Source: Macrostomum lignano (lineage: Eukaryota). Taken from it: DNA of 64,000 bases. The notes beneath the pieces are model-generated. The model was not told where the DNA came from and did no database searches. It was given only the letters and a program-made list of their open reading frames with translations. The translations under genes were made by a program, and so were the position numbers. The stretch lies in NCBI GenBank assembly GCA_002269645.1, contig NIVC01001619.1:76636-140635 (forward strand), written 5' to 3'. This document shows positions 40,440 to 59,555 of this stretch, piece after piece. The first letter of the stretch is position 1, and each line of letters begins with the position of its first letter.

Positions 40440-41035
40440 TATTTTCTCTATAATGAACTGTTTTAATGAGATCAGAAGCGACAGCTTTAACCATAGACAG
40501 TTGTAGACAGATGATATTTTCTCTATAATGCACTGTTTTAATGAGATCAGAAGCGACAGCTTTAACCATAGACAGTTGTAGACAGATGATATTTTCTCTA
40601 TAATGCACTGTTTTAATGAGATCAGAAGCGACAGCTTTAACCATAGACAGTTGTAGACAGATGATATTTTCTCTATAATGCACTGTTTTAATGAGATCAG
40701 AAGCGACAGCTTTAACCATAGACAGTTGTAGACAGATGATATTTTCTCTATAATGCACTGTTTTAATGAGATCAGAAGCGACAGCTTTAACCATAGACAG
40801 TTTTAGACAGATGATATTTTCTCTATAATGAACTGTTTTAATGAGATCAGAAGCGACAGCTTTAACCATAGACAGTTGTAGACAGATGATATTTTCTCTA
40901 TAATGCACTGTTTTAATGAGATCAGAAGCGACAGCTTTAACCATAGACAGTTGTAGACAGGTGATATTTTCTCTATAATGCACTGTTTTAATGAGATCAG
41001 AAGCGACAGCTTTAACCATAGACAGTTTCAGACAG
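40440..41035. repeat. 75-bp tandem repeat, about 8 copies
   Basis: TTGTAGACAG at 40501 and 40576; 25-aa period in ORF 40381-41178. Confidence 0.92.
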
Positions 41036-41107
41036 ATTAGAAAAAAACCACAACCATAATGAATAATAATAATGATAATAGGAAAAATTACATCCGCTCT
41101 AAATGAA

Positions 41108-41404: not shown

Positions 41405-44400
41405 TCAAATGTCGTAACTATTCGCATCGGAACTTGACTTCTCGATATTATCCGGTATGTTAGGCGTAGTGGACGTCTCATCAACAGTATCAATTGACGG
41501 ATTATTGGGCTGAAATGTAGGCTGAGGCCCGTCCTTGCTATTTAAACGCCTTTTTTCTTGGTCGCTTGACTCGTTGAAGCTGCTCTGACTACTGAGGCGC
41601 CTCCGTCTACGACGGAAAAACCAGAATGCGATACAAATAATAGCAGCGACTAAAACAAGACAAAGCAGCACGTATCCGATGATGTTCGAAATCGAAATAT
41701 CCTGTTTTTGAATAACTGATTTAGCAAGTTTTTCGCCTTCAGTACTATTATCTACAGGATTCCGACACTGCCGCATAGCTGTGCTGTTGAAACAGGCGCG
41801 AGATTCTTTAAAAGCTGTGCACTTATTAGCATTATAAATTGCCATATAGTGAGTTGGACAATGCCAGCAGGCGCAGTAAGAATCGTGATAGAAATTTCCA
41901 GTTTCAATTGCACAATAAACTTTTCTGATATTCTTGCAGTCATTTTGGAAGTTTTTCGGCACCTGCAATCGAAAAATTATTTAACGAGCCTATTTTTAGA
42001 GCTGAATTTTAATTCGGTCTTTTTTATTAGAGGCAGGGGGGTTGTGTGCACCCTGGCGCACTTTAAGCCACATAGGCACACAACCGGCGAGAGGCATTAC
42101 TGCCCATTCCGCCGACTCCCCTGAGCAGGCATACAAGCGCGCGGATACGTACGCAGGCACACACTCACACAGGAGTGTACAGCGGCCCACGACTTTATTT
42201 ATATTTAGGCATGTACACTTCACTGTGTCTTGGGGGTTGGCTCTCAAGGCCGTTAATTGCACGAGCAGAGCCAAGCCGAGATTCCAATTCAGCCCCAAAT
42301 TAATGTGACTGCACTTGGAATCGAGCCTGGGTCGCTGGCACACCAGAGCAGCTGCGCTACCGCTGGGCTACGGCTCCCCTTTAATTCGGTCTTTCGCATC
42401 GCGTAAATTCTCTAAATAATGACATCTTTTCAGTCATAAGGAGGCATCGAGGAGAAAAAAGTCACTCGACAAAAAGTCATGTGTCGCTTCAGAGTTGTTG
42501 CAGGTAAACGCAGGTAAAATCGGAAAAGAAGTGAATCTAAAACGACAAGATGTTACGGTACAAGTCGTCAAATAGTGGACTCTTTAATAGTGACTCCAGG
42601 GCCTTAGAGTCGTATCTGAGGCGGGCCAGAGCCTTGCATCTGACTCACTTTATGAATTAGAATCGCACTTCGCGTTCATAAAACTCTATATTTAGTCTAC
42701 TTGAGTTAGTAAAATGTCAAACACAAAAACGACTATTAGACGACTTTTTTGCGACTCTTTAAAGATACGGCAACTCATGTGAGATGCGCTCGTGACTCGA
42801 CTTAACAGTCGCCTCTCCGTCGCATTACAGTCGTTTGAGTCGTTAAAAAGTCATAAGAGAAGCCCCAGAGTCCAGGGGCGTCGCCATAGATTTTATGGTG
42901 GGGGGGGGACAAAAGCCGAGAATTCTAAATGTACATTATTTCCGAATCGGTGTTGTCATTGATTATTTTGAAACCGCAGGCACTCATTTTGGCGCCGCAG
43001 GCTCTCATTTTAGCGCCGCAGGCTCTCATTTTGGCGCCGAAGGCACTCATTTTGGCGCCGCAGGCACTCATTTTGGCGCCGAAGGCACTCATTTTGGCGC
43101 CGCAGGCACTCATTTTAGCGCCACAGGCACTCATTTTAGCGCCGCAGGCACTCATTTTAGCGCCGCAGACAACTCATTTTAGCGCCGCAGGCACTCATTT
43201 TGGCGCCGCAGGCATTCATTTTGGCGCCGCAGGCACTCATTTTAGCGCCGCAAGCTACTCATTTTAGCGCCACAGGCACTCATTTTAGCGCCGCAGGCAC
43301 TCATTTTAGCACCGCAGGCACTCATTTTGGCGCCACAGGCACTCATTTTGGCGCCGCAGGCACTCATTTTGGCGCCGCAGGCACTCATTTTGGCGCCGCA
43401 GGCACTCATTTTAGCGCCACAGGCACTCATTTTAGCGCCGTAGGCACTCATTTTAGCGCCGCAGGCACTCATTTTAGCGCCACAGGCACTCATTTTAGCG
43501 CCGCAGGCACTCATTTTAGCGCCACAGGCACTCTTTTTGGCACCGCAGGCACTCATTTTGGCGCCACAGGCACTCATTTTGGCGCCACAGGCACTCATTT
43601 TGGCGCCGCAGGCACTCATTTTGGCGCCGCAGGCACTCATTTTGGCGCCGCAGGCACTCATTTTAGCGCCACAGGCACTCATTTTAGCGCCGCAGGCACT
43701 CATTTTAGCGCCGCAGGCACTCATTTTGGCGCCGCAGGCACTCATTTTAGCGCCACAGGCACTCATTTTAGCGCCGCAGGCACTCTGTTTTGTCGCCCTG
43801 AAGCAAATTGATTATTGATTTCCATAATGGGTCAACAAGGTGGGGTGGGGGGGACAAAGGGACAAAGCATTGGCATGTCCCCCCATAGCTTCTACTGGGG
43901 GGGGGGCACATGCCTCCCCCCCCGGTGACGACGCCCCTGCCAGAGTCGCTAAAGCCACTAGAGAGTTGTTTACAATGACTATTTAGCGATTGTTCGTCAA
44001 GCTAACGTTTTCCGACGGGTCTATTTACCCTATTCTATCCAAGGACTGTTGAAGTAGAAGGACGAATAACCTCATTTTTAAGAACATTTTAGGATGCAGG
44101 TTTTTTTTTATAAAATACACTACGGAGATAGGAAGCTACGGAGATAGAATTATAAATTATTATTTTATGTTAATTTCTTATTCTGCGTACAAAATATCAA
44201 AATATGAAAACTTCTCATCTCCGTAGTGTATTTTTCGGCGAAAAGGGTTCAAAACTTTTTTCGATGAAACGTCTATGTCTGTGCTAGATTCTTTTGTACA
44301 AAAACCTGAGTACGCTATAAATAGGTCCAGTTTTGAAATTTATTCACCTTTACATCCTGCTGATCATTGCCGAAACACCGACAGATAAGAACAGCAGCGG

Positions 44401-44428
44401 CAATTAGCAGCTGAATTTGAAGATGCAT
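41405..44428 (-). CDS. Receptor A: type I membrane protein with 8-Cys TNFR-like ectodomain; exons 44348-44428 and 41405-41962; about 212 aa
   Basis: Exon 1 encodes signal peptide MHLQIQLLIAAAVLICRCFG and ends AAG|gtgaat; acceptor ttgcag|GTG in phase 0. Cys motif with CACWHC core, TM IIGYVLLCLVLVAAIICIAFWFF, RRRRRR stop-transfer. Confidence 0.8.
42023..42379 (-). mobile_element. tRNA-derived SINE family 1, full length, 15-bp TSD
   Basis: Head GGGGAGCCGTAGCCCAGCGG (A box) and GGCTCGATTCC (B box); AATAAAAAA tail; TSD TTTAATTCGGTCTTT at 42008-42022 and 42380-42394; near-identical to 60470-60834. Confidence 0.9.
42873..43939. mobile_element. hAT-type non-autonomous DNA transposon (MITE) containing a 21-bp tandem array
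   Basis: TIR CAGGGGCGTCG...CGACGCCCCTG; perfect 8-bp TSD CCAGAGTC at 42865-42872 and 43940-43947; internal (GCAGGCACTCATTTTGGCGCC)n at about 42975-43780. Confidence 0.88.
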
Positions 44429-45089
44429 CTGATCAGCTGATTAGGGAAGATTTAAAATAGTAAGATGCCGCTACTACTCTTAAAAGTAGTAATTCATAGC
44501 GAAATCGTATCTGAAATGAGCGACAAAGGTGGCAGATAAATTTGAAACTGATAACTGATAAAACTGCATATTAACTGAAAAAACTGCGATTATCCTACTC
44601 ACAAGTAGCCAAATAAAAAGTGTCAAGTCAAAAAACCGGTAAATGACTACAAAAATAGACTAAAATTTACAATCTGGCAGGTGCATGGATGTGTATTTTG
44701 TTTGAAATGGCAACTGCTAAAAAGATACAAATGTGAGAAAATTTCAAGTTGGCAAACTCGTCTTTTTTGCCTGAGAGATTAACCAGCGCAGTAAAACATG
44801 AACTCGCGGCACGTTAGTAGTAAAGTGCATGGCTAAGCAGAGAATTAAAACTATTGTAAAATTTATAAGCAGACAGTTTATCAAGGCTCTTGAGATAAAG
44901 CAGAAGTCAAACGGAATTTACACTACTAATAAGTAGAAATGTAAAAAGAAAGAAGCAAAATTTAAATAAAATATATTGTAGAATTGTTTAAACAGTTGGC
45001 ATTATCTGTAATTTTTCGTTGATTTAAAGACTATAATATATTCGTTAAAGTTTGAGTACACTAAAGAAATTATTACGACAAGGAGCCTT

Positions 45090-46230
45090 CAGTCAGTCAG
45101 TCAGTCAGTGTCAGTCAGTAAGTCACCCACTCACTCAAGTCAGTCAGTCAGTCAGTCAGTCAGTCAGTCATCACTCACTCACTCAAGTCAGTCATCACCC
45201 ACTCACTCAAGTCAGTCAGTCAGTCAGTCAGTCAGTCAGTCAGTGTCAGTCAGTAAGTCACCCACTCACTCAAGTCAGTCAGTCAGTCAGTCAGTCAGTC
45301 AGTCATCACTCACTCACTCAAGTCAGTCATCACCCACTCACTCAAGTCAGTCAGTCAGTCAGTCAGTCAGTCAGTCAGTCAGTCAGTCAGTCAGTCAGTC
45401 AGTCAGTCAGTCAGTCAGTCAGTCAGTCAGTCAGCACCCACTCACTCAAGTCAGTCAGTCAGTCAGTCACAAAGCCAAACAAATAAGATTGCATTCAGTA
45501 TCAACTGTAAGAAAACAATCAATAATTTCGCTAATGAATAAAGGAACGCAAGGCAATACTGTACAAAGATACAAAGACAGATGTCTGTACATTACTAATG
45601 TCAGTGTCGGTATAACAAAATGCGTCAGTTGAATCACGCAATTACTATGAGCATGACAAAAACATTGATGACAGCTGAGTACTGTTGGCATCGGTGTAGA
45701 AAAGCAGAGACACAGAGATCTGCTTTAAAAAATCCATTGGCAGGGCAACTGATTGAAATATTACTATAGGTCTTGTACTAGAGTACATTATTGTGGTTAG
45801 AAATATGAATTCCTACTTTATATAACTTTATTTCTATGAATATTGTCATCTTATGCGAGATCCGGGATATATGATAGAATAGCTTAGAGATTTTATGTGA
45901 AATATTAGAGATCTCAAATGAAATGTTAAAAATCTCATGAAAGATAATTGAGACTTCATATGACATTAGAGATCTCAAGTGAGATAAGAGATCTCATGCG
46001 GAAGATTCGAGATCTCATATGAGAGATTAGAAATCTCATGAGATATTTGAGATCTCATATGAAAGATTAGAAATCTCATGAGATATTTGAGATCTCATAT
46101 GAAAGATTAGAAATCTCATGAGATATTTGAGATCTCATATGAAAGATTAGAAATCTCATGAGCAATTAGAGACTTTATGTGAGATTTGAGATCTCATGCG
46201 AGAGATTCGAGACCTGATATGAGATTCAGA
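45090..46230. repeat. Interrupted (CAGT)n 45090-45470 and 40-bp GAGATCTC-containing repeat 45960-46230
   Basis: Direct reading. Confidence 0.85.
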
Positions 46231-46421
46231 ATATCATATGTAGGAGATTTCAGCTCAGTTTAAAGTACAAAAAAGTAACCATTTCAAATACAGCAAAAAA
46301 CTGAATGATTTAATTATTGAAAAGATAGTGAGCAGACAGAAAAACTAAATTCAGTCTGAGAACAATATATAATAAGCGGAGCTGATTATGCACATAAACA
46401 GACATGTCACATGATGTAGGA

Positions 46422-47916
46422 TCACACTTTTGATAGGATTTGGTCGCGGCACTTTAACCCATAAGCATTAGTAGCCGCAGGCGCCAGCATAGGCGCGGAC
46501 AGATGCAGCAGGGGATTCAACTGCCTAACGATTGAGCACACGGACATGCTAGACGCTGGTATGTTTGGCGCGAGAGCCTCCGATGAGACACCGTCTTGTA
46601 CTGAGCAGTTCTCGCTTAACCACTTCGAGCAACGTTGAGCGCCTTTGGATAAATATCTGCTGGACTCGTCTGGGCACTTTATTGGTTGACAGGTTCTACA
46701 GGGGCCGTTGCAGCCGCTGTCGGTGCCCCCGGGGTGCTCCACGATGGGGGACTGCTCTCTGCAGGTAGGTTAATTATCAGATATGATTGTTATCTGACTC
46801 AGGTAGGTTAACTATCAGAGATGATTGTTATCTGACTCGGGTAGGTTAATTATCAGATATAGTTGTTATCTGACTCAGGTAGGTTAATTATCAGATATGA
46901 TTGTTATCTGACTCGGGTAGGTTAATTATCAGAGATGGTTGTTATCTGACTCAGGTAGGTTAATTATCAGATATGGTTGGTATCTGACTCAGGTAGGTTA
47001 ATTATCAGATATGGTTGTTATCTGACTCGGGTAGGTTAATTATCAGATATGGTTGTTATCTGACTCAGGTAGGTTAATTATCAGATATGGTTGTTATCTG
47101 ACTCAGGTAGGTTAATTATCAGATATGGTTGTTATCTGACTCAGGTAGGTTAACTATCAGAGATGATTGTTATCTGACTCAGGTAGGTTAATTATCAGAT
47201 ATGATTGTTATCTGACTCAGGTAGGTTAACTATCAGATATGGTTGTTATCTGACTCAGGTAGGTTAATTATCAGATATGGTTGTTATCTGACTCAGGTAG
47301 GTTAATTATCAGATATGGTTGGTATCTGACTTAGATAGGTTAATTGTCAGATAAGAGATATTACTTACTCATCGAGTTCATCAGCAGACTCAACTGACTC
47401 GTTTAATCCACTCTGACGCCCGACTCCGCTCCGGCCTCGAGCGCAGAACCGGATTATTATGACCGTAAATAGTATGGCCAATGCAAAAAAGCAGGCTAAT
47501 AAACTGAATATCAAAGCCACATTGGAGTTCGAAGGATGCTGAACTGTTGAAGACAACGTCGCAGTCGTGGTTGACATTTCAGTTGAAGTATGCTGAATAC
47601 GCTCAGTGGTAGTGCCTGCCACTGGCGATAAGCTTACATTTCGCATAGTTGCCTGACAATAGCCCAGCGTCAGTGCGTCTCGACATTCTTGTAAAAGTTG
47701 TTGTCGAGGAATCAATGCTGAATAGCACGAATATTCATTTACCAATGGCTCGCAATCGACGCACATACAGTCGCCATTGTAATACTGCCGATCCAAATCG
47801 CATTCTGGCGGGAGATAGCAATCTAACTGGTTCTTAGGCGTGTCTACAAAACCGCTGGCTCGGTTGCTTGACAACAGGAACAGCAACAATATGCTTAGTA
47901 GCATTCGTTGATCCAT
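46422..47916 (-). CDS. Receptor B: type I membrane protein with 8-Cys ectodomain, Thr-rich stalk, TM and Cys-containing tail; exons 47369-47916 and 46422-46758; about 294 aa
   Basis: Signal peptide MDQRMLLSILLLFLLSS; CMCVDC core; TM VALIFSLLACFFALAILFTVIII; donor GA|gtaagt joins ctgcag|A in phase 2 into the open frame EQSPIVEHPGG... Confidence 0.8.
46764..47345. repeat. 38-bp minisatellite forming nearly the whole intron of receptor B
   Basis: Unit CTCAGGTAGGTTAATTATCAGATATGGTTGTTATCTGA, about 15 copies. Confidence 0.92.
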
Positions 47917-48819
47917 GCTGTTTAAATCAATCAATTGCCGCTAAGCCGTCACGTACTGGACATTTGCGTTGACGAAAGAAAAAGCCTCAACAAAAGCTCT
48001 TCTTGTTGTTAATGTTGACGACGACTGAAGAGTAGACAGAACCTTTAAGAAGAGTAGACAGGTTGGGTGAAAAGGTTTCTAACAAAAATGATGAGCCTAG
48101 CATATAATCTGTAGCTATTGCGTTGGTAAGAGCGAGCCAGAGAGGTAGAGACTATATAGGAGTTGCAGCGGCAGAGAAGAGCGGTGAAGACGCAGTAGTA
48201 GAAATAACAGAAAAACTGCTTACGAAGTTCCCTCGAAGACACTTTGTCATCAGCATCTCTAAAAAAACAGCTCTCTATTCTAAAAATAACTATTAGACAT
48301 GGTCCCCGCTACTAAAAATAGAACACTTGGTCTAGCTATAAGCTTAAAAACGAAGCGGGTGATGCTATAATACGAGGTATAATACAAACTTTTTCTACTT
48401 ATATAGCGTAATAACTGAACTCTAAAGTGGAACGATGCTTATTTTAACAGAACCCCCCCCCTTCCCCAAAGCCCAAGTGCGAGTTCATTCACTGCTAGCT
48501 GGTAACTACGCAATTGAAAGTAAAGTAGCGGAATTTATCTGGCGCAGATGCTAATAAATATGATAAATTTTTAGAGAAACAAAAACGTTTATTATTGCAG
48601 CGATAAAAGTTATAATGCGCAATTAACAGTAAAATAGGGGCGCTATTATTAAATATTATAACAAATTTTGTAAATATCTGCAATTTAAAAGAGCGCATTG
48701 TGAGCTAGAAGACAAAAGATAAAGAAATAACTATTGATTTGAATATGCGGTTGGCGATGATTCTTCGATAGCAAAACCTTAAAGCAATACAATATAGTTG
48801 AAACAACACGAAACGGTCT

Positions 48820-49790
48820 CTGTGGGGAGGGGGCGCCAGTCTCTGTATGGGAGGGGGCGCCAGTCTCTGTATGGGAGGGGGCGCCAATCTCTGTATGGGA
48901 GGGGGCGCCAGTCTTTGCGGGGGAGACGGCGCCAATCTCTGTATGGGAGGGGGCGCCAGTCTTTGCGGGGGAGGGGCGCCAATCACTGTATGGGAGGGGG
49001 CGCCAGTCTTTGCGGGGGAGGGGGCGCCAATCACTGTATGGGAGGGGGCGCCAGTCTTTGCGGGGGAGGGGGCGCCAATCTCTGTATAGGAGGGGGCGCC
49101 AGTCTGTATGGGAGAGGGCGCCAGTCTCTGTATGGGAGGGGGCGCCAGTCTTTGCGGGGGAGGGGGCGCCAGTCTCTGTATGGGAGGGGGCGCCAGTCTT
49201 TGCGGGGGAGGGGGCGCCAATCTCTGTATAGGAGGGGGCGCCAATCTCTGTATAGGAGGGGGCGCCAGTCTTTGCGGGGGAGGGGGCGCCAATCTCTGTA
49301 TAGGAGGGGGCGCCAGTCTTTGCGGGGGAGGGGGCGCCAATCTCTGTATGGGAGGGGGCGCCAGTCTTTGCGGGGGAGGGGGCCAATCTCTGTACGGGAG
49401 GGGGCGCCAGTCTTTGCGGGGAGGGGCGCCAATCTCTGTATGGGAGGGGGCGCCAGTCTTTGCGGGGGAGGGGGCGCCAGTCTTTGCGGGGGAGGGGGCG
49501 CCAATCTCTGTATAGGAGGGGGCGCCAGTCTGTATGGGAGAGGGCGCCAGTCTCTGTATGAGAAGGGCCGCCAGTCTCTGTATGAGAAGGGGCGCCAGTC
49601 TCTGTATGAGAAGGGGCGCCAGTCTCTGTATGAGAAGGGGCGCCAATCTCTGTATGAGAAGGGGCGCCAATCTCTGTATGAGAAGGGGCGCCAGTCTCTG
49701 TATGAGAAGGGGCGCCAGTCTCTGTATGAGAAGGGGCGCCAATCTCTGTTTGAGAAGGGGCGCCAGTCTCTGCGGGGAGGGGGCGCCAGT
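48820..49790. repeat. G-rich about 24-bp minisatellite (GGGAGGGGGCGCCAGTCTCTGTAT)n; degenerate copies at 50205-50330
   Basis: Direct reading. Confidence 0.92.
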
Positions 49791-50885
49791 TGCGACTGTA
49801 AATAATTTTAAGACTTTGAGATTGCGGTAGCACTTTACCCGAAGGGAGCTAGCTAGTGTGTCCCGGGGCCGGCTTGACTAATGATTCTGCGTCTTTGTCT
49901 GAGCTGCCTATCGTTCAAATAAAACACAATTATGCGAACGACATTGTAATTTTAACAGTTAAATAAAGGCGTAAATAGGCACATTGTAAAAAGGGAAAAA
50001 TGGAAGGAGGGGCACAAAAAGGGATATCAACTGATTTAAACAAGCGTTTGGAGGTGATTTGACAATAGAGCAATCTAAAACTATATACGAGCGTATTATA
50101 CGAAGGAGTATGGATATGAGAACCACTGTTAGCAACAGAGCGTACTGATTTTTATAGCAAAAACTGCTCAAAATTTGCCTGCCTGCCAGTCTCTGAGGGC
50201 CACATTTAAGGGGGGGGGCGCCAGTCTAAGGGGCAAAGTCTCTTTGGGGGGGAGCGCTAGTCTTGGAAGGGGGCGACAGTCTCGGAGGGGGGGGCGCTAG
50301 TCTCCGAGTTTCTGGGAGACAGGAAGACAGTCTCTGCGGAGAGGAAGTTGTGAAATATTCTGTCTTCCAGCAGGGACTCGCTCTAGTATTGCTTTTTCGA
50401 TCTAATAAACTTTTGAAGCCGCTATTGATCGCTAGATGATCTTCGTAGTACTGATAGAAAGAGGTTAGGCCCTTAAAATATAACTGGCAAGCTTAATATG
50501 TGCTTTTACTGATGGGTACAAACGATGCCGTTATAGTACCAATGACAATGACAAGCTCAACTGTGTGACGAATATAAGATTCCTTAGTAAACGTTTACAT
50601 ATATGAACTGTTTCATTGCTAATCCGAGAGTCTTGGGTTCAGGTTGCCAACCGGAACGACGACTCAATTTATTGTTTTTTTCATCTATTTTTCTCGGAGT
50701 GACTCATTAAATTGCTTGATATCATCTGCTGGATATCAAAGCGATCTAGAAAACTAGCGACAAGAAACTTGCTGATAATAAGCGTTAAAATAGGCTTCGA
50801 AGCACTTAGCCTTTGGCGTGGCGAAAAATATTGTGCACTCTTCACTATTGTGCATTCCTATTGAGGAATGTTCAACCAACGATGA

Positions 50886-51698
50886 TTAAAATTTGACAGG
50901 GTTTAATTTGCTTTGCATGAACTGTTGCTCAGGCCGCCTAATCGCGTCAAACTGTTCATCACCATTCTGCGCACAGAGAGGCAAAGGTATAACTGGCGCC
51001 GCAACCTGCGGTTCCTGATCGGAAGTTAGAGCTTCCGTTGCAGTTTCAGCAGCCGGTTCATGCCAACCTTCGGAGGTGAGTTTAGTTGACGGTGACGCCG
51101 CATCCGACTGAGACAGAGACTGTGCATCAATAGCTTGAGTATCTCCAGACTCAACTGCAGAAACGTCTTCGCCACTGTAGCATTGAGTAGCCCAATACCG
51201 AATTTTAAAGGACAGAAGTTGACTAGATCGATTGAGTCGAAATACTAGCAAGGCAAAGCAAAACGAGACAAACAACAAGCCGAAAGCGATAGCAACCGGT
51301 TGAATTCCAAACGCTAAAGAGCGGTTATGCAACGGGAGGTCATTGCTTGGAATAATAGGCCGAGCAGAATTACCATTTTCAAATTTCTCTGGAAGACCAA
51401 GTCTTGATGGCAAAACCGATTCATTACAATAAGAATACCTCTTAATTAGAATACAGAATTCGTCTTTGGAACTATGCGTGCTAGTGCAAGATTGGAGGAC
51501 ATCGTCGCAAGACTGACAATTGCATAGAAAGTCGTGGTACTGATTGGCCAAACAATGTACAAGGTTCTGCATAGATTCACTGCAATCTTCGCGACTTCGT
51601 GGAAAGCTGCCAATTGATTTAACTATGTTGAATTTAAAGTTGACAATCCATAGCCATAGTTGCTGATAATAAATAAGTTGATTGAAAAAGTTGCGCAT
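50886..51698 (-). CDS. Receptor C: single-exon type I membrane protein with 8-Cys ectodomain, 270 aa
   Basis: Intact ORF; CNCQSC core; TM VAIAFGLLFVSFCFALLVF; acidic tail. The signal peptide is only weakly hydrophobic. Confidence 0.8.
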   Translation of the reverse strand: MRNFFNQLIYYQQLWLWIVNFKFNIVKSIGSFPRSREDCSESMQNLVHCLANQYHDFLCNCQSCDDVLQSCTSTHSSKDEFCILIKRYSYCNESVLPSRLGLPEKFENGNSARPIIPSNDLPLHNRSLAFGIQPVAIAFGLLFVSFCFALLVFRLNRSSQLLSFKIRYWATQCYSGEDVSAVESGDTQAIDAQSLSQSDAASPSTKLTSEGWHEPAAETATEALTSDQEPQVAAPVIPLPLCAQNGDEQFDAIRRPEQQFMQSKLNPVKF

Positions 51699-52121
51699 TT
51701 TTTGTACAAATCTGTTGACTTTACAGACCTTTGCGGTATGGCTCGAGCGCCTGAAAATTCGTTAAAAACATAGCTAATTGTAAAGGTAAATTAGCAAGCG
51801 GTATGGTAGTGTGTGTGTGGACTACCTAATCCTTAGAATTCAATGAGATGTGTTCAACTTTAAGTGGGACAGCTTCGATATGGGAAAATGAGAGAAAAAC
51901 AGTGATGCTTAGCAAAGCATCAGAAGACTAATTACTAATTAATTAATCTTTAATTAGGGTTTATCACTCCAATGGGATTGTCGGCGAAGCTACAATAACA
52001 GTTTTGCGGGCTAAATATAGCTTTTTGAAGCCTATTTGGGCCTACGAGCATAGAATTTAATCCTAGATACGTTTGTAGTATGGATAGTATGGATGTAGTA
52101 TGAATTTTGTAGTATGGAGCT

Positions 52122-53019
52122 TTTGTCCATGGTAGCTGGGCTGGCACAGCGGCATTTAGTTTGGTCCAACAAGCACCAATTTGGTCCAACAAGCATCAAT
52201 TTGGTCCAACAAGCACCAATTTGGTCCAACAAGCATCAATTTGGTCCAACAAGCACCAATTTGGTCCAACAAGCATCAATTTGGTCCAACAAGCACCAAT
52301 TTGGTCCAACAAGCATCAATTCGGTCCAACAAGCATCAATTCGGTCTAACAAGCACCAATTTGGTCCAACAAGCACCAATTTGGTCCAACAAGCACCAAT
52401 TTGGTCCAACAAGCATCAATTTGGTCCAACAAGCACCAATTTGGTCCAACAAGCATCAATTTGGTCCAAAAAGCACCAATTTGGTCCAACAAGCATCAAT
52501 TTGGTCCAACAAGCACCAATTTGGTCCAACAAGCACCAATTTGGTCCAACAAGCACCAATTTGGTCCAAAAAGCACCAATTTGGTCCAAAAAGCACCAAT
52601 TTGGTCCAACAAGCATCAATTTGGTCCATAGCTTCATTTGCAACTGTTGCGAATGAGCAAGATCAGCCCCAGAATTGTGTATGATATGCTAGGCTGTTGA
52701 ACCAATGTCATTGGCTTGCGATCGAAGCGCTCGACAGAGGTGAACACCCAAAGGACATTGCAAGGCTGTTCAATGTAAAAGAAAGATGGTTTACAGCATC
52801 CAGCAGCGCTTTGAAACCACTGCCGGCAGAGGTCGCCTGCGAAAAGAAAGATAATTCTATGTTGACGTTGCAGAAAATGTAGCAGAATTTGAAGAAACAG
52901 TTCCAGTTGGTTATCAGATTTTTGACTATCGGTAGAGCTCTGGAAAAGCGTTTGGACCAAATTGATGCTTGTTGGACTAAATTAAATGCCGCTCTGACAG
53001 CCTCGCTACCATAGACAAA
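52122..53019. mobile_element. Inverted-repeat element with an expanded 20-bp subterminal array and a possible transposase HTH remnant
   Basis: Left TTTGTCCATGGTAGC...GCGGCATTTAGTTTGGTCCAACAAGC is inverted at about 52953-53019; (TTGGTCCAACAAGCACCAAT)n at 52160-52628; internal frame AIEALDRGEHPKDIARLFNVKERW. Confidence 0.6.
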
Positions 53020-53798
53020 CATTGGCAAATGTATCTTGGATTAACTTAAATGCGCGTAAATTTAAATAAGCTGCAAAAAAAGCTATATTTGATCGAACTA
53101 TGAGCTAATTATACCTTTGCTGAAATTGAAATGGTTAGGTCCTACAATGAATGGCGAAATGATTAACACGTAATTAGAACTTTTACCACAATTTTAAAGG
53201 AAATATATACGGCTGTAATTTTATTTACAAAATTTACGAATATATGGTATTATGATAGATACTTCTAACCTGCAAGAGTATATGTAGGTTAAAAATATTA
53301 CAATGGGAAAATCAGTTAAGGTTAGTGTTTGTTTGCATAAATAGAGAGTACGAGCGTATTTCGACTATATATCGAAAGCTACACGTCATCTTCACATATA
53401 TAAAAAGTGCGTAAATTATCTGTACATCACAAATTGTGCCCCTAAAGAAGAAAAATAATGCAAACATTCGAATCAAAACAAAAAAAACATTTCGCTTCAA
53501 AAGTAGCAGTAATTAGTGATATTGGAGACTGCTAAAAGTACGAATTTCTGGACCTTTACGGCGTGTAAATTTAGTACCAAGGACGACTTAGGAATTGCAG
53601 GAAACTTCATTTCCTACAAACCATCTGAAAGGCTGGTCTTTAATACACTACTGAGTTAGGAACTGTTCGCTAAAAGGATAACAAGCTTCTTATACGCCAT
53701 AAAACTTGCTTAGTACAAACTGGATATCCATAAAGCGAGCACAGGTCGGTCAAACGTCTTCCATAGTTAATATGTGATAAAATTGAAACACAAAAATT

Positions 53799-54178
53799 CG
53801 AAGGGTGTCTGGAAAGTTCTGACACTTTTGATTCTAGAGCAGCTGCAAGCACAACTTTGGTATCATTTTTAATGAATTCAGTCGCGTGTTTTTTGGTCAT
53901 TTCATTCAAAAGTTATGTGTGAAAAACCATCGCAGTGCCCCTAAAATAACTCCCCCCCCACTTCATTCCTCAACTCAAGTCTACCGCGGCGTAGCTAAGT
54001 TGCGTCACTTGCAAGATTGAGAGACTTTACCTGCACTCTCAAAAATGACGACCACAGACTGAATCTTCTGTAATGGCGAATTTTCGATGTTATAAATTTT
54101 GTTATAAATTTTGAATGAAATGACCAAAATACAGGCGACTAAACTCTATAAGTGTCAGACTTTTCCATACACCCCTCG
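53799..54178. mobile_element. Tc1/mariner-like MITE with long imperfect TIRs
   Basis: Right end reads TA-CGAGGGGTGTATGGAAAAGTCTGACACTT on the minus strand, matching left CGAAGGGTGTCTGGAAAGTTCTGACACTT; second inverted pair at about 53880-53917 and 54104-54140. Confidence 0.65.
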
Positions 54179-54284
54179 TACACGTAGGCTGAAATTTTAG
54201 CCACAACTCATTGCACAGCTGCTCTATTATTGACTGGTAAAACTGTAAAACTATTCAACATGCTGAGCACGGGTTATACAACGA

Positions 54285-54500
54285 CGTCTTAAGTAGAAGG
54301 ACGGGAAAAAACGGAGGACGGACACTACGGAGATAGGAAGTTTTTTTCAGCACAAAAATTGCTATTGCTTTTGATAGGAGGCAGATCCAGTGTTCATCTT
54401 TTGATATGTTGTGCCTTTCTTATTGCTCTATCGATATTTATAAAGCTTTTCGTTCAGAAAATTAGAATTTTATGTTAATTTTTTATTCTACGTACATTTA
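54285..54500 (+). repeat. Dispersed non-autonomous repeat; inverted copy at about 12095-12345, partial copies at about 44050-44240 and 16540-16625
   Basis: Shared CGAAAAGCTTTAT.AATATC.ATAGAGCAATAAGAAAGGCA...AAAGATGAACA...CTATCAAAAGCAATAGC...CCTATCTCCGTA. Confidence 0.7.
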
Positions 54501-55371
54501 CTGTACCTAACAATCATAAAAATGCATGGCACGGCTCCAATCATTGCTTCTATGAATCTATTTTATCATTTGTGCTACGCATATTTGTTACAGTCAGCTA
54601 AGAATGATAAAACAGACTCATAAAACTAAAGAGCTGAGCTGTGCTATTTTAACGGTTTTAGGCACAAGACATGCACGAATGTATGTAGAATCCAAGTTGT
54701 CCTTGGGGTTATATATAACTATTTGAACGCATTTGTCGCATACAACTTGCTGATTGAATATCACAGGGAAAATTAACCGAAAAGTTGTGCAATTTGGTTT
54801 AGCAGTTTTACTATTCAATAGATCAACCTATGCAAGGGGTTGTGGATAAAAGTTGGGCTCGTTCACAGCAACTTTTCGTAATTTATTAACGAAATATCAG
54901 CAAATGAACAGATAATACATTAAATAACTATTGCTACACAAATAATTATTCAATTTATTACAAAATGAAAACAATTTAGAATAAAATTAGCACCTGATAA
55001 TTTATAAGTAGCATAAAACTGATTAAATATGGCGCTTCATATTGTTAAAAAATTACCATAAGATACACAATATCAACATATAAGCGGAATGTGTACATAT
55101 GGATTGTTTTACTCGTAAATGGCGCTAAGAATAAATCAATTTGTCCAAAAATACGCACGTGTTTTTAGAAAAATTGCCAAGAACAGACACAACCATAACT
55201 TGTAGCCATAAAATCACGCGGTTACCTCGTGGATTTGTTTCTTTGCTTTGCGCTCTGGTCCGCCTTCATTGCACTAGGATAAAAAGTGAGTTTGACATAT
55301 TAGCTTTGCCTCAGATCATAGAATAACAAAGGCTTCCATTCTTGAATAAGTGTTGAATAAATTTGGCATCC

Positions 55372-56244
55372 TCAAAAGCTACTAGTGGCATTGGCACTAG
55401 CAGATGCTGCCACTTTTTTGCGCGCATTGTCTTGATCGCGCCTGCTTCCAGGCGTAGCAGACTGTTGCTCGGTAGTGCCACTAGCTGGAATGCCTGGCGT
55501 ACTGCCTGCCAGGACTGGATCCATCACGTCTAGTAGTTGCGCAGGCGGTGTCGTCTGAGTGACTCCGGCGCTTAGGCTGCGCGCTAGCAGCGGTCGGGAC
55601 GACTGAGTCTGCTCTGGAGGCGATGACGGTACCGAAGCGGCCCGACCGAATATGCGCCATTGTTGCATAAACTTTGGCAATCTCTTTGAGTATGTACGGC
55701 CAAGAAGCAGTGCTGCTACTAGTGCTGCGAAAATTATAATTAATACCAAACCGATAGCAAGAAAGACAACATAATTTGGCTGCTCATAGTTTGTAGTTGA
55801 CTGATAATTGTAGGCAGCTGCAGCATTATTATTAGTGGACGCAAATCTACTAGCAACCGAAGCGACACTGTTCAATGTGGAAAGATGGGTGATGGTGGAA
55901 GCTTCACGTGTTGTACTAGCGCTTGTAGAAGGCAAAGTAGTAGTTTTGGTACTGTTGTCGCAGTAATACAATTCTTTTAATTTTGAACAAAACTCGTCAC
56001 TAGGACGTGGCTGACTGCAATGCTGCCAAGTGGCCTCACAATGTACACAAGTGCAGTGGACATCGTAGTACTCATTTTCGGAGCAATTTAGCATGTTCTG
56101 AGTTTGCCGGACGCACTCGTACCGACTCATTGGGTAGCTCAGTGGATTTTTTACACTCATCGACAGAACCAAATTAGACATCAAGTTGATCTGAATCAGA
56201 GTTACAAAAGTCAGAAATTTCCAAATTTGGTTATTTGCTGCCAT
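55372..56244 (-). CDS. Receptor D: single-exon type I membrane protein with 8-Cys ectodomain, about 290 aa
   Basis: Hydrophobic N-terminus; CSENEYYDVHCTCVHC; S/T-rich stalk; TM YVVFLAIGLVLIIIFAALVAALLLG; Pro/Ser/Thr-rich tail. Confidence 0.85.
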   Translation of the reverse strand: MAANNQIWKFLTFVTLIQINLMSNLVLSMSVKNPLSYPMSRYECVRQTQNMLNCSENEYYDVHCTCVHCEATWQHCSQPRPSDEFCSKLKELYYCDNSTKTTTLPSTSASTTREASTITHLSTLNSVASVASRFASTNNNAAAAYNYQSTTNYEQPNYVVFLAIGLVLIIIFAALVAALLLGRTYSKRLPKFMQQWRIFGRAASVPSSPPEQTQSSRPLLARSLSAGVTQTTPPAQLLDVMDPVLAGSTPGIPASGTTEQQSATPGSRRDQDNARKKVAASASANATSSF

Positions 56245-57925
56245 CACCAGACTTCTCCAGGGAAGAGAGCGCTATCGCAGCCCGTTTTAGCTCACATGCA
56301 TGAAATTTTAGCAAGGCATTTAAAGAGAGCATATAGACGACATTGATATACAAACAAGTAGGGGACACATTTAAAAATCATTTCGTTAAGATGAACAGAA
56401 ACTGTAACTGAAAAAGTACAAAAAATCAACTCTTTACCAGTACTATTTCTGCATTAAAATTAAAAAGTCTACCATTTGTCATCTTGCCTTATGAGACTAT
56501 ATAATATTTAATATTTTGTAGCCATAAATACTTATTTAAAGCAGTGAATTAAATTTTAAAGACATCAATATCAAATTTATGACGTTTATTTTTACAAGCA
56601 AAATTTACAATGTTTACAACAGATCAAGTGGCGCTTGGAAGTAATAATTTAAAATCAATAAAATAACGTGCAAACAAAAAAGACAAAAAACAACTGCGGA
56701 TATTAAATAAGCTTCTTTTGATTTTGATTAATTGCTTTCGTTATTTCAAACACAATATTTTTTCGAAAACATATAAAAAGTAATTCTCCAGCTACACACT
56801 AGCATTGAATGCCAAGTATAATATAAGCAGATATGAGAGAGCATATGCAAATAGGACCGGAACGAAAACGCACAATTTAATATTTTGACATGGGCTCGCA
56901 ATATGTTGTGCTTCGAATGTACAAAACGGAATAATATTTGCCGGTGAAAAAATGACGCATTATTAGATTAATATATGCCAATCCCAGAAGTGGTCTGGTC
57001 TGGTCTGCAAGTGGTCTGGTAGCGCATTAGGCGTTGTCTTTTAAATGCCATAGCGCGAACGGGGTGACGCAACATCTAGCACCATTTTCCTGGCCACGCT
57101 GGCAACCTGACCATCGCTATTAACAACAACAGAAACATTGATAGTCAATTAGCAGGTTTTAAGTCACACTTGGTAATTTAGCTGTTTTAAAAACTAGAAA
57201 GAAAGACGCATAAAGACATTTAATTTTTTAAGTACAGTGTACATTTTCTTTAGTGATGTTTATCTGGTGCTGTTTAAAACAGAACAAGGCTTTTTAAAAA
57301 TTCAAAAATTAAGAATTGGAATACTTCACACGATATTTTGTTGAGGCAGAGTGACGCAAAGGATGATCACAGATATATAAATAAAAATGTTGCAGAAATA
57401 TTGACGATTACTACTTTAAGCATTGGGGACACAAGAAGCAGAATTTGGATTTTTGAATGGATTTTACAGCTGCTAATGTGTGTTATTTCAAGTGATCTTA
57501 AATCTCTTTCTCTGCTTACTATAAAGTTTGTCAACTTAAGCTTATAAAGTGGAGCCCAATACACAAATGATACGTCATTATGCTCACAGTGACACCAGGA
57601 AGCTAGGTTGGGCGAAAAAGTGACAAAAAATTGGACCTAGGATAGGGGAGAACAAGCAAAGGGATAATTTGGGACACCACTTTATTAGCTTAAGTTTACA
57701 TAATAGTTCCTGATTATACGTCGTCTTTTTGTGGTGATTTTTATCATGATGCATACAGAAATTTTTCGTCTGCTAAAAACTTTCTTTAACAAATACGATT
57801 GTTTTGTTCAAAGATGGTTAATTTTACAGATTACAGACCTAGGTTGGAGCGGCTGTTGTATTATTCGTTATGACAAATTAACAATTCATACAAAAACGCT
57901 TCAAATTTTCGAATGACCCGACAGT

Positions 57926-58675
57926 TCAGGCATTGGCTTGCGGAGCAGGGTCAGGAGTGTCTGGTATGTCGACCACTACCGGCTCATGATCCAAGTCATT
58001 TTCCACATGCTGCTGCTGCTGCTGCTGCACATCAAGCAAAGGAGCTGCTGGTTCAATTGCAGTAGGCTCACTGAACATGCTTACTCTGCGGTTGGCGCTG
58101 TTGTTATCAAATGGCGTCTGAGTCTGAGCTTGCCGACTCCTAGGCAACAGGCGACAAAAGCTAGTAAACTTCACTCTTATCACGTCGGCGTACTTCAATC
58201 GAATGAACATCGCTATTCCGATTACAACAACTATGATAATTAGAATAGGAATTGTTATCTTCACTGCAGTGGACAGACCGTCATAGACTTTGCCGTTGCT
58301 GTCGGTAGTTAACAACAGATTATCAGTAGCTCCGCTAGTAGACTCTACGCCTCTCGCACTGGTGGTAGGAGTGAAACTACTAGCATTGCCACTGCTTGTA
58401 GTATTCAGTGCGCAATAGTTTAGCTCACGATATTTCGGACAGATTAAGTCATTAGGATTTGAAAAGCATCTTTGTTTCACAATGGTGCAGCTCTGACACT
58501 CGCATTGCGAGTTGAAATAATTCTCGCTTTGATTCGAGCAAGCTTGAAGCAATCTTACATTAATTCTATCCTTGCAAATGTTGAAACTGAAAGGATACGA
58601 CAATTCCTGTGCCACGGAATCAAGTAGCTGGCATAAAAAGATTATTGTTGACAAAACGATAATCCGGCAATCCAT
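57926..58675 (-). CDS. Receptor E: single-exon type I membrane protein with 8-Cys ectodomain, about 249 aa
   Basis: Signal peptide MDCRIIVLSTIIFLCQLLDSVA; CECQSC core; S/T stalk; TM ITIPILIIIVVVIGIAMFI followed by RLK. Confidence 0.85.
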   Translation of the reverse strand: MDCRIIVLSTIIFLCQLLDSVAQELSYPFSFNICKDRINVRLLQACSNQSENYFNSQCECQSCTIVKQRCFSNPNDLICPKYRELNYCALNTTSSGNASSFTPTTSARGVESTSGATDNLLLTTDSNGKVYDGLSTAVKITIPILIIIVVVIGIAMFIRLKYADVIRVKFTSFCRLLPRSRQAQTQTPFDNNSANRRVSMFSEPTAIEPAAPLLDVQQQQQQHVENDLDHEPVVVDIPDTPDPAPQANA

Positions 58676-58849
58676 AGGGCCATAAAAAAGCAATAAAGTA
58701 ATTTTTGTATTACCAAATATTTGCTGCAGAATAAATAAACAAATATTGATTAGAAAAATAAGTATAATTCTCCATCAGAAAATTTTTTATCCACTACAAT
58801 AAAAATACCATTTTTCACTCCTAAATAATACTATCTAAGACTCTAGATA

Positions 58850-59555
58850 ACATCACCTGTGACTAGACAATAGCACCTGAGACTCTAGATAATTACCACC
58901 TGTGACTCTATATAATTACCACCTGTGACTCTATATAATTACTACCTGTGACTAGACAATAGCACCTGTGACTTTAGATAATTACCACCTGTGACTCTAG
59001 ATAATTACCACCTGTGACTCTAGATAATTACCACCTGTGACTCTATATAATTACTACCTGTGACTAGACAATAGCACCTGTGACTTTAGATAATTACCAC
59101 CTGTGACTCTAGATAATAGCACTTAAGACTCTAGATAATTACCACATGTGACTCTAGACAATAGCACTTAAGACTCTAGATAATTACCACCTGTGACTCT
59201 AGATATTTACCACCTGTGACTGTAGACAATAGCACTTAAGACTCTAGATAATTACCACATGTGACTCTAGACAATAGCACTTAAGACTAGATAATTAGCA
59301 CCTGTGACTCTAGATAATTACCACCTGTGACTCTAGATAATTACCACCTGTGACTCTAGATAATTACCACATGTGACTCTAGACAATAGCACTTAAGACT
59401 CTAAATAATTAGCACCTGTGACTCTAGATAATTAGCACCTGTGACTCTAGATAATTAGCACCTGTGACTCTAGATAATTACCACCTGTGACTCTAGATAA
59501 TTAGCACCTGTGACTCTAGATAATTACCACCTGTGACTGTTGATAATACCACCTG
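58850..59555. repeat. About 23-bp minisatellite (CACCTGTGACTCTAGATAATTAC)n
   Basis: Direct reading. Confidence 0.92.

What the first reader, a model, noticed from the sequence alone, without database searches (positions are those of the whole stretch)
41405..58675. Tandem array of five diverged single-pass receptors sharing an 8-Cys, TNF-receptor-like ectodomain
Seen: five same-strand genes (A 41405-44428, B 46422-47916, C 50886-51698, D 55372-56244, E 57926-58675). Each has an N-terminal hydrophobic segment (weak in C), one Cys module, a stalk (S/T-rich in B, D, E), one TM helix and a disordered tail with no death domain. All fit C-x5-11-C-x9-12-C-x-C-x2-C-x6-12-C-x8-13-C-x8-C. C-x-C-x2-C and the final C-x8-C are invariant, and aromatic residues precede Cys3 (FYHDSY, QYYNGD, QYHDFL, EYYDVH, NYFNSQ). 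Little else is conserved. Known: single-CRD TNF receptors (BCMA, TACI, BAFF-R, Fn14, Drosophila Grindelwald) have this architecture, and D (CSENEYYDVH..CVHC) echoes BCMA as I recall it (CSQNEYFDSLLHACIPC). Inference: a lineage-specific, fast-diverging family of TNFR-like or immune/recognition receptors that standard annotation would call hypothetical proteins.
Basis: partly seen in the sequence, partly recalled or inferred. Interest (0 to 1): 0.9.

Follow-up and report, generated by a model that had tools for sequence, protein, structure and literature searches.

The report
Five tandem flatworm 8-cysteine membrane receptors
A free-living flatworm (Macrostomum lignano) carries a tandem row of five fast-diverging genes for single-pass surface proteins that share a small 8-cysteine knob; the knob weakly but specifically resembles the one-domain TNF receptors BCMA and TACI, so these could be missing receptors for the worm's many TNF ligands, but this is not proven.

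Summary
Exactly five minus-strand genes at the stated coordinates encode signal peptide, 8-Cys module, stalk, one TM helix and a disordered tail. The full Cys pattern occurs 5 times in the window and 0 times in 100 shuffles. The window is Macrostomum lignano contig NIVC01001619.1. A and B carry GenBank accessions, and D and E are also in NCBI; that annotation is built from RNA-seq transcripts. A profile search of 1.84 billion proteins found only the window's own proteins, so the family looks lineage-restricted.

The TNFR reading is partly supported. For it:
- AlphaFold gives N-helix + β-hairpin + helix-loop-helix, the element order published for Grindelwald, BCMA and TACI.
- hhalign ranks BCMA (21.9) and TACI (15.4) above 18 other small Cys-rich sequences (≤11.3) and above all 300 shuffles.
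- UniRef names a fused homeologous B+A model "TNFR-Cys domain-containing protein".

Against it:
- No Pfam TNFR model matches, and no PDB sequence or Foldseek match to a TNFR.
- The CxxCxxxC signature is absent.
- A DxL motif occurs only in C.
- TRAF motifs are not enriched.

The sequence searches have little power: a BCMA+TACI profile does not retrieve BAFF-R, Fn14 or Grnd either. Verdict: a real, uncharacterised receptor family; P(TNFR-type) about 0.45.

The parts
41405..44428 (-). Gene A (212 aa). Exon 1 44348-44428 encodes the signal peptide MHLQIQLLIAAAVLICRCFG. The intron holds a 21-bp minisatellite. Exon 2 is 41405-41962. The 8-Cys module is at 41765-41938 and the TM helix at 41615-41671.
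   Evidence: The splice model gives a protein identical to GenBank PAA65775.1 / A0A267EW63 (BOX15_Mlig000476g3). Regex match, hydropathy, minisatellite.
46422..47916 (-). Gene B (294 aa). Exon 1 is 47369-47916 and exon 2 is 46422-46758. The intron holds a 38-bp minisatellite. The module is at 47656-47820 and the TM helix at 47455-47511. A stop codon overlaps the donor site, so a 183-aa unspliced form is possible.
   Evidence: The protein is identical to PAA65776.1 / A0A267EWF3 (BOX15_Mlig030720g8) and to the gene called in locus L002.
50886..51698 (-). Gene C (270 aa, single exon). The module is at 51426-51584 and the TM helix at 51240-51296. It has the weakest N-terminal hydrophobic segment. 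It is not among the called genes in L001 or L002.
   Evidence: No gene is called there and the exact protein is not in the collection. The homeologous copy is 99.4% identical with an intact ORF, dN/dS 0.19 from 5 differences.
55372..56244 (-). Gene D (290 aa, single exon). The module is at 55960-56115 and the TM helix at 55714-55770. The stalk is 38% Ser+Thr.
   Evidence: The exact protein is called on three M. lignano contigs. AF2 of the module gives pLDDT 79.7.
57926..58675 (-). Gene E (249 aa from the ATG, single exon). The module is at 58412-58576 and the TM helix at 58202-58258. The stalk is 37% Ser+Thr.
   Evidence: It is called as a 250-aa product that starts one codon upstream of the ATG. 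The homeologous copy is 259 aa, with 1 change in the module against 23 in the tail.

Best explanation
SHOWN. The region is a five-gene tandem array in Macrostomum lignano. Each gene encodes a type I single-pass membrane glycoprotein with this layout: signal peptide, a roughly 55-residue 8-cysteine knob, an N-glycosylation sequon at or just after Cys8, a stalk (mucin-like in B, D and E), one TM helix, and a disordered tail with no recognised domain. The genes are real: four of the five are in an RNA-seq-based annotation, and ORFs are kept in homeologous copies. In B, C and E the knob is the most constrained part, while stalks and tails drift.

INFERRED. The knob is most likely a highly diverged single-CRD TNF-receptor-type domain of the BCMA/TACI/Grindelwald kind, built as follows:
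- a beta-hairpin carrying the invariant aromatic residue;
- a disulfide-stapled helix-loop-helix after it;
- an extra N-terminal helix tied on by Cys1.

A likely disulfide scheme is C1-C3 and C2-C4 (intercalated, X2-like) plus C5-C8 and C6-C7 (nested, C2-like). This scheme is a guess, because no model coordinates were available.

Proposed mechanism (inferred). The membrane-distal knob docks in the groove between protomers of a trimeric M. lignano TNF/Eiger-like ligand. The species has 6-10 such ligands but only one canonical TNFR reported. Binding would cluster three receptors, and the disordered tails would then recruit adaptors through short linear motifs. Duplication and divergence would have produced five ligand specificities.
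For: Real genes:
- The window is 100% identical to NIVC01001619.1 of GCA_002269645.1.
- A and B have GenBank accessions, and D and E are listed in NCBI.
- That annotation is derived from a genome-guided RNA-seq assembly, with novel transcripts below RPKM 0.5 discarded (PMC5730564).
- Homeologous copies keep intact ORFs.
- Between copies, the module has 0 (B), 0 (C) and 1 (E) changes, against 6, 2 and 26 in stalk plus tail.

TNFR-type:
- AF2 of D (pLDDT 79.7, pTM 0.65) gives H12-19, E29-31, E37-39, H40-47, H55-62. A gives the same element order at low confidence.
- hhalign of the family profile against BCMA+TACI scores 19.7, against a maximum of 16.9 in 300 shuffles.
- BCMA (21.9) and TACI (15.4) rank first and second of 20 Cys-rich sequences; the rest score 11.3 or less.
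- The signal persists without D.
- BLASTP of D against BCMA gives 9/19 identities, 20 bits.
- UniRef100_A0A1I8IZQ0, a fused model of the homeologous B+A genes, is named 'TNFR-Cys domain-containing protein'.

Context:
- M. lignano has 10 reconstructed TNF ligands but one NGFR-like TNFR (PMC7519573).
- A preprint counts 6 Eiger, 16 Wgn-like and 1 Grnd-like in this species.
Against: - None of the five modules, nor the UniRef-named fused protein, matches Pfam TNFR_c6, BCMA-Tall_bind, TACI-CRD2 or BaffR-Tall_bind at E<=10. BCMA and TACI controls do match.
- No PDB chain matches by sequence.
- Foldseek of the D model finds no TNFR. The best PDB hit has E 4.6 and TM 0.26. The viral library also gives nothing.
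- hhalign probability is only 16-33%. BAFF-R, Fn14 and a TNFR1 CRD score at background.
- The Cys framework CxCxxC-x6-12-C does not contain the CxxCxxC/CxxCxxxC signature used for ligand-binding CRDs.
- A DxL motif, the hairpin-tip ligand-binding motif of BCMA and TACI, occurs only in C.
- TRAF2/TRAF6 motifs in the tails are not enriched over shuffles.
- Which segment of the fused protein earned the UniRef name is unknown. The separate A and B entries are named 'Uncharacterized protein'.
- The AF2 alignment has only five sequences.
Confidence: 0.45

Rival explanations
1. This is a lineage-specific (Macrostomum or Macrostomorpha) family of mucin-like surface recognition or adhesion proteins. 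On this reading the 8-Cys knob is a new small disulfide-rich fold unrelated by descent to TNFR CRDs, and it binds some other partner (self, microbe, gamete or matrix). The BCMA resemblance would be convergence of short hairpin-plus-helix disulfide motifs.
For: - No homologue outside the species in 1.84 billion representative proteins, and none with a single-protein search.
- No Pfam domain.
- No structural neighbour in the PDB or BFVD (TM 0.31 or less).
- The Cys framework and the extra N-terminal helix are not those of any described TNFR module pair.
- No TRAF motif enrichment and no death domain.
- The tandem array shows 20-40% identity in the module and unalignable tails, which is typical of fast-evolving recognition genes.
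Against: - hhalign picks BCMA and TACI specifically out of 20 Cys-rich sequences and beats all shuffles.
- The predicted element order equals that published for Grnd, BCMA and TACI.
- UniRef gives a 'TNFR-Cys' name to the fused homeolog model.
- Negative sequence searches carry little weight. A BCMA+TACI profile does not retrieve BAFF-R, Fn14 or Grnd from the PDB either.
- Grnd 'superposes poorly' with BCMA, TACI and Fn14 (PMC8024323).
Confidence: 0.42
2. These are CD164/endolyn-type (MGC-24) sialomucins: trafficking or adhesion mucins with a Cys-rich subdomain.
For: - Weak Pfam hits: B to MGC-24 (E 0.08, 13.7 bits) and A to CD34_antigen (E 0.051).
- Ser/Thr-rich stalks in B, D and E.
- Type I topology.
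Against: - Scores are far below the gathering cut-offs (13.7 against 28.5 bits). The match spans the low-complexity stalk.
- Only one of five proteins hits.
- The Cys module is N-terminal rather than set between two mucin domains.
- None of the five tails ends in a YxxPhi motif; CD164's C-terminal YHTL is recalled from memory.
Confidence: 0.04
3. These are not functional genes: chance ORFs, or decaying pseudogene copies of one ancestral gene.
For: - C is not annotated and has a weak signal peptide.
- No expression data could be retrieved for any member.
- D's 100% identity between copies is uninformative, because at least 1.8 kb around it is identical too.
Against: - Five ORFs of 212-294 aa have the same architecture and all eight Cys invariant. 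The pattern occurs 0 times in 100 shuffles.
- A, B, D and E are in a transcript-derived annotation.
- ORFs are intact in homeologous copies, including E, where all indels are in frame.
- The module is far more conserved than the tails between copies.
Confidence: 0.03

Closest known systems
Drosophila Grindelwald (Grnd), single-CRD TNFR (PDB 6ZSY/6ZT0; PMC8024323)
   Same: - Type I single-pass protein with one small N-terminal CRD.
- 8 cysteines.
- A beta-hairpin followed by two antiparallel helices, as in the AF2 element order here.
- An aromatic residue on the hairpin packing against the helices. Here this is the invariant Tyr/Phe before Cys3.
- No death domain.
- Not detected by Pfam TNFR_c6 (stated for Grnd in the preprint).
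   Different: - Grnd helix cysteines are spaced C-x3-C...C-x3-C; here they are C-x6-12-C...C-x8-C.
- Here an extra N-terminal helix carries Cys1.
- The CxxCxxxC signature is absent.
- There is no Foldseek hit to 6ZSY or 6ZT0.
Human BCMA (TNFRSF17) and TACI CRD2 (TNFRSF13B)
   Same: - They give the best and second-best hhalign scores of 20 Cys-rich sequences (21.9 and 15.4).
- There is a local match CS[EQ]NEY[YF]D..H.C..C between D and BCMA.
- In the hhalign alignment with BCMA+TACI, five of BCMA's six cysteines pair with family Cys4-Cys8, and BCMA's first falls next to family Cys2. The N-glycosylation sequon follows the last Cys.
- A hairpin plus helix-loop-helix layout.
- A single CRD and no death domain.
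   Different: - BCMA and TACI have 6 Cys and are type III proteins (no signal peptide).
- Their hairpin is about 3 residues longer and carries the DxL ligand-binding motif, which only C has here (DFL).
- Pfam BCMA-Tall_bind and TACI-CRD2 do not match the flatworm modules.
- hhalign probability is only 16-33%.
Platyhelminth canonical TNFR (SmTNFR/NGFR-like; PMC7519573)
   Same: It occurs in the same phylum and is a single-pass receptor with Cys-rich ectodomain. M. lignano has one.
   Different: The canonical receptor is described as NGFR-like with conserved TNFR domains (CRDs), and the M. lignano one has a conserved death domain. The five genes here have one atypical 8-Cys module, no death domain, and were not reported in that survey.
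CD164/MGC-24 sialomucin
   Same: Type I membrane protein with a Ser/Thr-rich stalk plus a small Cys-rich region. There is a weak Pfam hit for B.
   Different: The hit is below threshold. The domain order differs. There is no similarity in the Cys region.

Membership tests
TNF receptor superfamily, single-CRD subgroup (BCMA/TACI/BAFF-R/Fn14/Grnd) | Match to a curated TNFR CRD sequence model (Pfam PF00020 TNFR_c6, PF09257, PF09305, PF09256) | tested here: not met
   There was no TNFR family at E<=10 for the five full proteins, the five isolated modules, or the UniRef 'TNFR-Cys' fused protein P0008. BCMA and TACI positive controls match at 81 and 90 bits. Caveat: the preprint states that Grnd itself fails PF00020.
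TNF receptor superfamily, single-CRD subgroup | Ligand-binding CRD signature CxxCxxC or CxxCxxxC (as used in preprint 10.1101/2024.07.27.603686) | tested here: not met
   All five have C-x-C-x2-C followed by 6-12 residues before the next Cys. Only the CxxC part is present.
TNF receptor superfamily, single-CRD subgroup | Fold: beta-hairpin module followed by a disulfide-stapled helix-loop-helix module | tested here: inconclusive
   The AF2 element order fits (D: E29-31, E37-39, H40-47, H55-62 at pLDDT 79.7; A gives the same order at pLDDT 51.5). Foldseek gives no TNFR hit. Published members superpose poorly on one another, so the negative result is weak.
TNF receptor superfamily, single-CRD subgroup | Module-type disulfide connectivity (A1 or X2 followed by C2 or D2) | not testable with these tools
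   Model coordinates are not returned, and all eight Cys are invariant, so no covariation is available.
TNF receptor superfamily, single-CRD subgroup | Profile-profile similarity to solved single-CRD members | tested here: inconclusive
   hhalign against BCMA+TACI scores 19.7 with probability 15.7%. This is above all 300 shuffles. BCMA and TACI rank first and second of 20 sequences, and the result is robust to leaving out any one paralog. BAFF-R, Fn14 and TNFR1 CRD2 score at background.
TNF receptor superfamily, single-CRD subgroup | Hairpin-tip DxL motif (BCMA/TACI/BAFF-R) | tested here: not met
   Only C has D-F-L. A has DSY, D has DVH, B has NGD and E has NSQ. Grnd also lacks the motif.
TNF receptor superfamily, single-CRD subgroup | Single-pass topology with a membrane-distal CRD; tail signals through adaptors (TRAF motifs) | tested here: inconclusive
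   The topology criterion is met. TRAF2 major motif SDQE occurs in A and C, and PxQxxD in D, but this is no more than in shuffled tails (P=0.2-0.36).
TNF receptor superfamily, single-CRD subgroup | Binds a trimeric TNF-family ligand 3:3 | not testable with these tools
   There is no multimer prediction or ligand sequence at hand. The ligands exist in the species.
CD164/MGC-24 sialomucin (PF05283) | Pfam gathering score, and a Cys-rich subdomain set between two mucin domains | tested here: not met
   B scores 13.7 bits against a cut-off of 28.5, and the other four have no hit. The Cys module is N-terminal with a single stalk. hhalign scores 10.7, which is background.
Twin Cx9C / Cmc1 (PF08583) | Pfam gathering score, and a soluble mitochondrial intermembrane-space protein | tested here: not met
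   Only C hits, at 19.5 bits against a cut-off of 22. The proteins have a TM helix and sit in a secretory-pathway architecture.

The most novel reading that the evidence does not exclude
The 8-Cys knob is a new disulfide-rich fold with no structural neighbour in the PDB. On this reading it defines a receptor family born within the Macrostomum lineage and expanded in tandem, and its resemblance to BCMA and TACI is convergent. The ligands would be non-TNF partners such as microbial or reproductive ones.
Probability: 0.3. Interest if true: 0.6.

Novelty: new variant of a known kind. Interest (0 to 1): 0.48.

Why it matters
Published surveys give flatworms a single NGFR-like TNF receptor, yet report 6-10 TNF ligands in M. 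lignano. That leaves a ligand-receptor mismatch. If these five genes are BCMA/Grnd-type single-CRD receptors, they would be candidates to fill the gap. They would also show an independent radiation of minimal TNFRs in a spiralian, and they would supply natural variants of a very small ligand-binding scaffold in a model animal that supports transgenesis. If they are not TNFRs, they are a compact example of a taxon-restricted receptor family with a possibly new mini-fold. In either case the claim is directly testable by binding assays and multimer modelling. The topic is fairly specialised and the evidence is still weak.

Tried and rejected
Searches that found no relatives:
- The search for homologous proteins with the module alignment found no candidate. 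With D alone it found only D itself.
- The third search, with BCMA+TACI, was meant to build a deep TNFR profile. It returned only two PDB-derived chains, so no deep profile could be made.
- The full HMMER scan of 1.84 billion representatives returned only B and E.
- PDB sequence searches with D, the family profile and the fused UniRef protein found nothing relevant.
- Foldseek of the D model against the PDB and BFVD, and of the low-confidence A model against the PDB, gave only noise.

Readings rejected:
- Cmc1/twin-Cx9C hit for C: sub-threshold and topologically impossible.
- MLANA, EphA2_TM, CD34 and similar hits: driven by the TM segment or low-complexity sequence.
- B exon 2 Cys cluster as a second CRD: no similarity to the family or to TNFRs.
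- D's 0/873 differences between contigs as evidence of selection: the identical tract extends at least 1.8 kb beyond the CDS.

Other negatives:
- TRAF, dileucine and YxxPhi motifs are not enriched.
- Expression look-ups by gene ID found nothing in the main text of the library or in the supplements of two M. lignano papers.

Full report
**Source and setting.** The exact protein of gene D is encoded on three contigs of GCA_002269645.1, the Macrostomum lignano Mlig_3_7 assembly. Window 45372-64000 is 100% identical to locus L002, the end of NIVC01001619.1. Two further contigs (loci L001 and L003) carry copies that are 93-97% identical, either homeologous or allelic. The neighbours in the window have no evident link to TNF signalling:
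- a TRPM channel (about 21.5-26 kb, minus strand);
- a DEAD-box helicase (34.7-38 kb, minus strand);
- a WSC-domain ORF (15149-15598);
- an NAD-dependent epimerase/NmrA-type gene, NDUFA9-like by my reading (61651-62526).

**Observation.**
- A six-frame scan for the full 8-Cys pattern gives exactly five matches, one per gene. It gives zero in 100 locally shuffled windows.
- Each protein has one strong TM helix (hydropathy 2.8-3.3). The N-terminal hydrophobic segment is strong in A, B and E, moderate in D and weak in C. There is an NxS/T sequon at or right after Cys8.
- Stalks are 37-40% Ser+Thr in B, D and E, and 12-16% in A and C.
- My two-exon model of A (212 aa) and the two-exon model of B (294 aa) are identical to GenBank PAA65775.1 and PAA65776.1.
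- tblastn finds no sixth member in the window.

**Are they paralogs?** C-D, D-E and C-E are significant by BLASTP (4e-14, 1.5e-8, 8e-4). A and B reach only about 0.004 against D or E in a five-sequence database. Their membership therefore rests on the identical Cys framework, architecture, strand and adjacency.

**Are they real genes?**
- A and B carry GenBank accessions, and D and E are listed from NCBI. A and B are named 'hypothetical' or 'Uncharacterized'.
- The GenBank annotation of this assembly was derived from a genome-guided RNA-seq transcriptome with TransDecoder ORFs, and novel transcripts below RPKM 0.5 were discarded (PMC5730564). These four genes therefore have transcript support by construction.
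- C is not annotated.
- Between the window and the homeologous copy, ORFs stay intact. dN/dS is 0.4-0.46 for B, 0.19 for C and 0.77 for E, all from few differences.
- More telling is where the amino-acid changes fall. The module has 0 (B), 0 (C) and 1 (E, R to K) changes, against 6, 2 and 26 in stalk plus tail. A is the exception, with 6 module changes, but all Cys are kept.
- D is identical at the nucleotide level, but so is a tract of at least 1.8 kb around it. That says nothing about selection and suggests gene conversion or a shared haplotype.

**Distribution.** A profile of the five modules searched with HMMER against 1.84 billion representative proteins returned only B and E themselves. 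A word-indexed search with D returned only D. At detectable similarity the family is restricted to M. lignano, or to relatives that are not in these collections.

**Testing the TNFR interpretation: negatives.**
- No Pfam TNFR model matches the full proteins, the isolated modules or the fused UniRef protein. BCMA and TACI controls match strongly and cross-match each other's models.
- No PDB chain matches by sequence.
- The AF2 model of D's module is moderately confident (pLDDT 79.7, pTM 0.65), yet Foldseek finds nothing in the PDB (best E 4.6, TM 0.26) or in BFVD. The A model is poor (pLDDT 51.5).
- The CxxCxxC/CxxCxxxC signature is absent, and a DxL motif is present only in C.
- TRAF motifs are not enriched in the tails.

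**How much do the negatives weigh?** They weigh little.
- A BCMA+TACI profile retrieves only BCMA and TACI chains from the PDB, not BAFF-R, Fn14 or Grnd.
- BCMA and TACI find each other only at E about 0.1.
- The Grnd structure paper states that Grnd 'superposes poorly' with BCMA, TACI and Fn14 despite a shared topology (PMC8024323).
- The preprint notes that PF00020 misses known Grnd homologues.

**Testing the TNFR interpretation: positives.**
1. *Element order.* The AF2 secondary-structure order in D is N-terminal helix, beta-hairpin (29-31, 37-39), helix (40-47), helix (55-62). A gives the same order. [quoted passage not shown] The flatworm module also has 8 Cys, and its one invariant non-Cys ectodomain residue besides a Pro is the aromatic on the first hairpin strand.
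2. *Profile comparison.* hhalign of the family profile against BCMA+TACI scores 19.7 (probability 15.7%). Five of BCMA's six cysteines pair with family Cys4-Cys8, and its first falls next to family Cys2. Across 300 column shuffles of either side the means were 9.2-9.5 and the maximum was 16.9.
3. *Specificity.* Against 20 small Cys-rich sequences, BCMA (21.9, 33%) and TACI (15.4) rank first and second, and everything else scores 11.3 or less. The result survives leaving out any one paralog.
5. *Database name.* The 90% cluster that holds A and B also holds UniRef100_A0A1I8IZQ0. This 472-aa protein is a fusion of the homeologous B and A gene models and is named 'TNFR-Cys domain-containing protein'. 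I infer that this reflects an automatic PROSITE- or SMART-type domain call. I could not determine which segment triggered it, and the separate A and B entries do not carry the name.

**Context.** Bertevello et al. found one NGFR-like, death-domain-bearing TNFR in M. lignano but 4+6 TNF ligands (PMC7519573). A 2024-26 preprint counts 6 Eiger, 16 Wgn-like and 1 Grnd-like in this species. I could not tell whether any of those is one of these five genes.

**Conclusion.** The family is real, probably expressed, taxon-restricted, and constrained mainly in its knob. The best single explanation is a very divergent single-CRD TNFR-type receptor family, at about 0.45. Nearly as likely, at about 0.42, is an unrelated taxon-specific recognition family with a new mini-fold. 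The mechanism of ligand-induced trimeric clustering with adaptor recruitment by disordered tails is inference from the TNFR analogy. No step of it is shown here.

Noticed in passing
window 46422-46758 (B exon 2) and 47365-47371 (donor): B's predicted cytoplasmic tail contains a dense Cys cluster (C-x3-C-x2-C-x4-C-x14-C-x7-C), which is unusual for a cytosolic segment. It has no similarity to the family module or to TNFR CRDs. A TAA stop overlaps the GTAAGT donor, so an unspliced 183-aa isoform with a 29-aa tail is possible.
   Followed up: partly
window 54695-56500 versus L001 and L003: A tract of at least 1.8 kb that includes the whole D gene is 100% identical between three contigs, while adjacent DNA differs by 3-5% or more. 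This suggests recent gene conversion, a shared haplotype or an assembly effect rather than selection on D.
   Followed up: partly
window 57926-58675 versus L001 7532-8311: The homeologous copy of E is 259 aa against 249 aa, with 88.8% identity. 23 of its 30 differences, including in-frame indels, fall in the tail, and only one conservative change falls in the 8-Cys module.
   Followed up: yes
UniRef100_A0A1I8IZQ0 (P0008): An older gene model fuses the homeologous B and A genes into one 472-aa protein with two signal peptides and two TM helices. This looks like an annotation artefact, yet it is the only member with an informative name ('TNFR-Cys domain-containing protein').
   Followed up: partly
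window 40436-41037, 42974-43785, 45089-45469, 45884-46224, 46762-47353, 48816-49790, 52160-52628, 58835-59556: Every intron or spacer of the array holds a long minisatellite (periods 75, 21, 4/135, about 20/40, 38, 24, 20 and 23/112 bp, with up to 41 copies). Copy numbers differ between homeologous contigs. These repeats produce many of the long spurious ORFs in the region.
   Followed up: partly
C-termini of B (…SKV), D (…SSF), C (…VKF) and A (…YDI): B and D end in a class-I PDZ-ligand-like motif [ST]-x-hydrophobic (2 of 5 proteins; P=0.007 against shuffled tails, but it was one of seven motifs tried post hoc). Grnd is reported to have a binding domain for Veli, which I recall to be a PDZ protein.
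   Followed up: partly
tails of D (aa 234-242) and E (aa 207-215): D and E share a short tail motif P-A-x-L-L-D-V and a juxtamembrane segment rich in basic and aromatic residues. A, B, D and E each have R-x-x-S sites in their tails (A, B and D also close to the membrane), but these are not enriched over shuffles.
   Followed up: partly
window 50886-51698 (gene C): C is the only member that is not annotated or called on either contig, and it has the weakest signal peptide. It is still 99.4% conserved with an intact ORF in the homeolog. It is also the only member with a DxL motif (DFL) before Cys3.
   Followed up: partly
window 1-41000 and 59000-64000: Neighbouring genes are a TRPM channel (SLOG and TRPM2-like domains, about 21.5-26 kb), a DEAD-box helicase (34.7-38 kb), a WSC-domain ORF (15149-15598) and an NAD-dependent epimerase/NmrA-type (NDUFA9-like) gene (61651-62526). 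A reverse-transcriptase-like ORF by eye at 11056-11517 gave no Pfam hit.
   Followed up: partly
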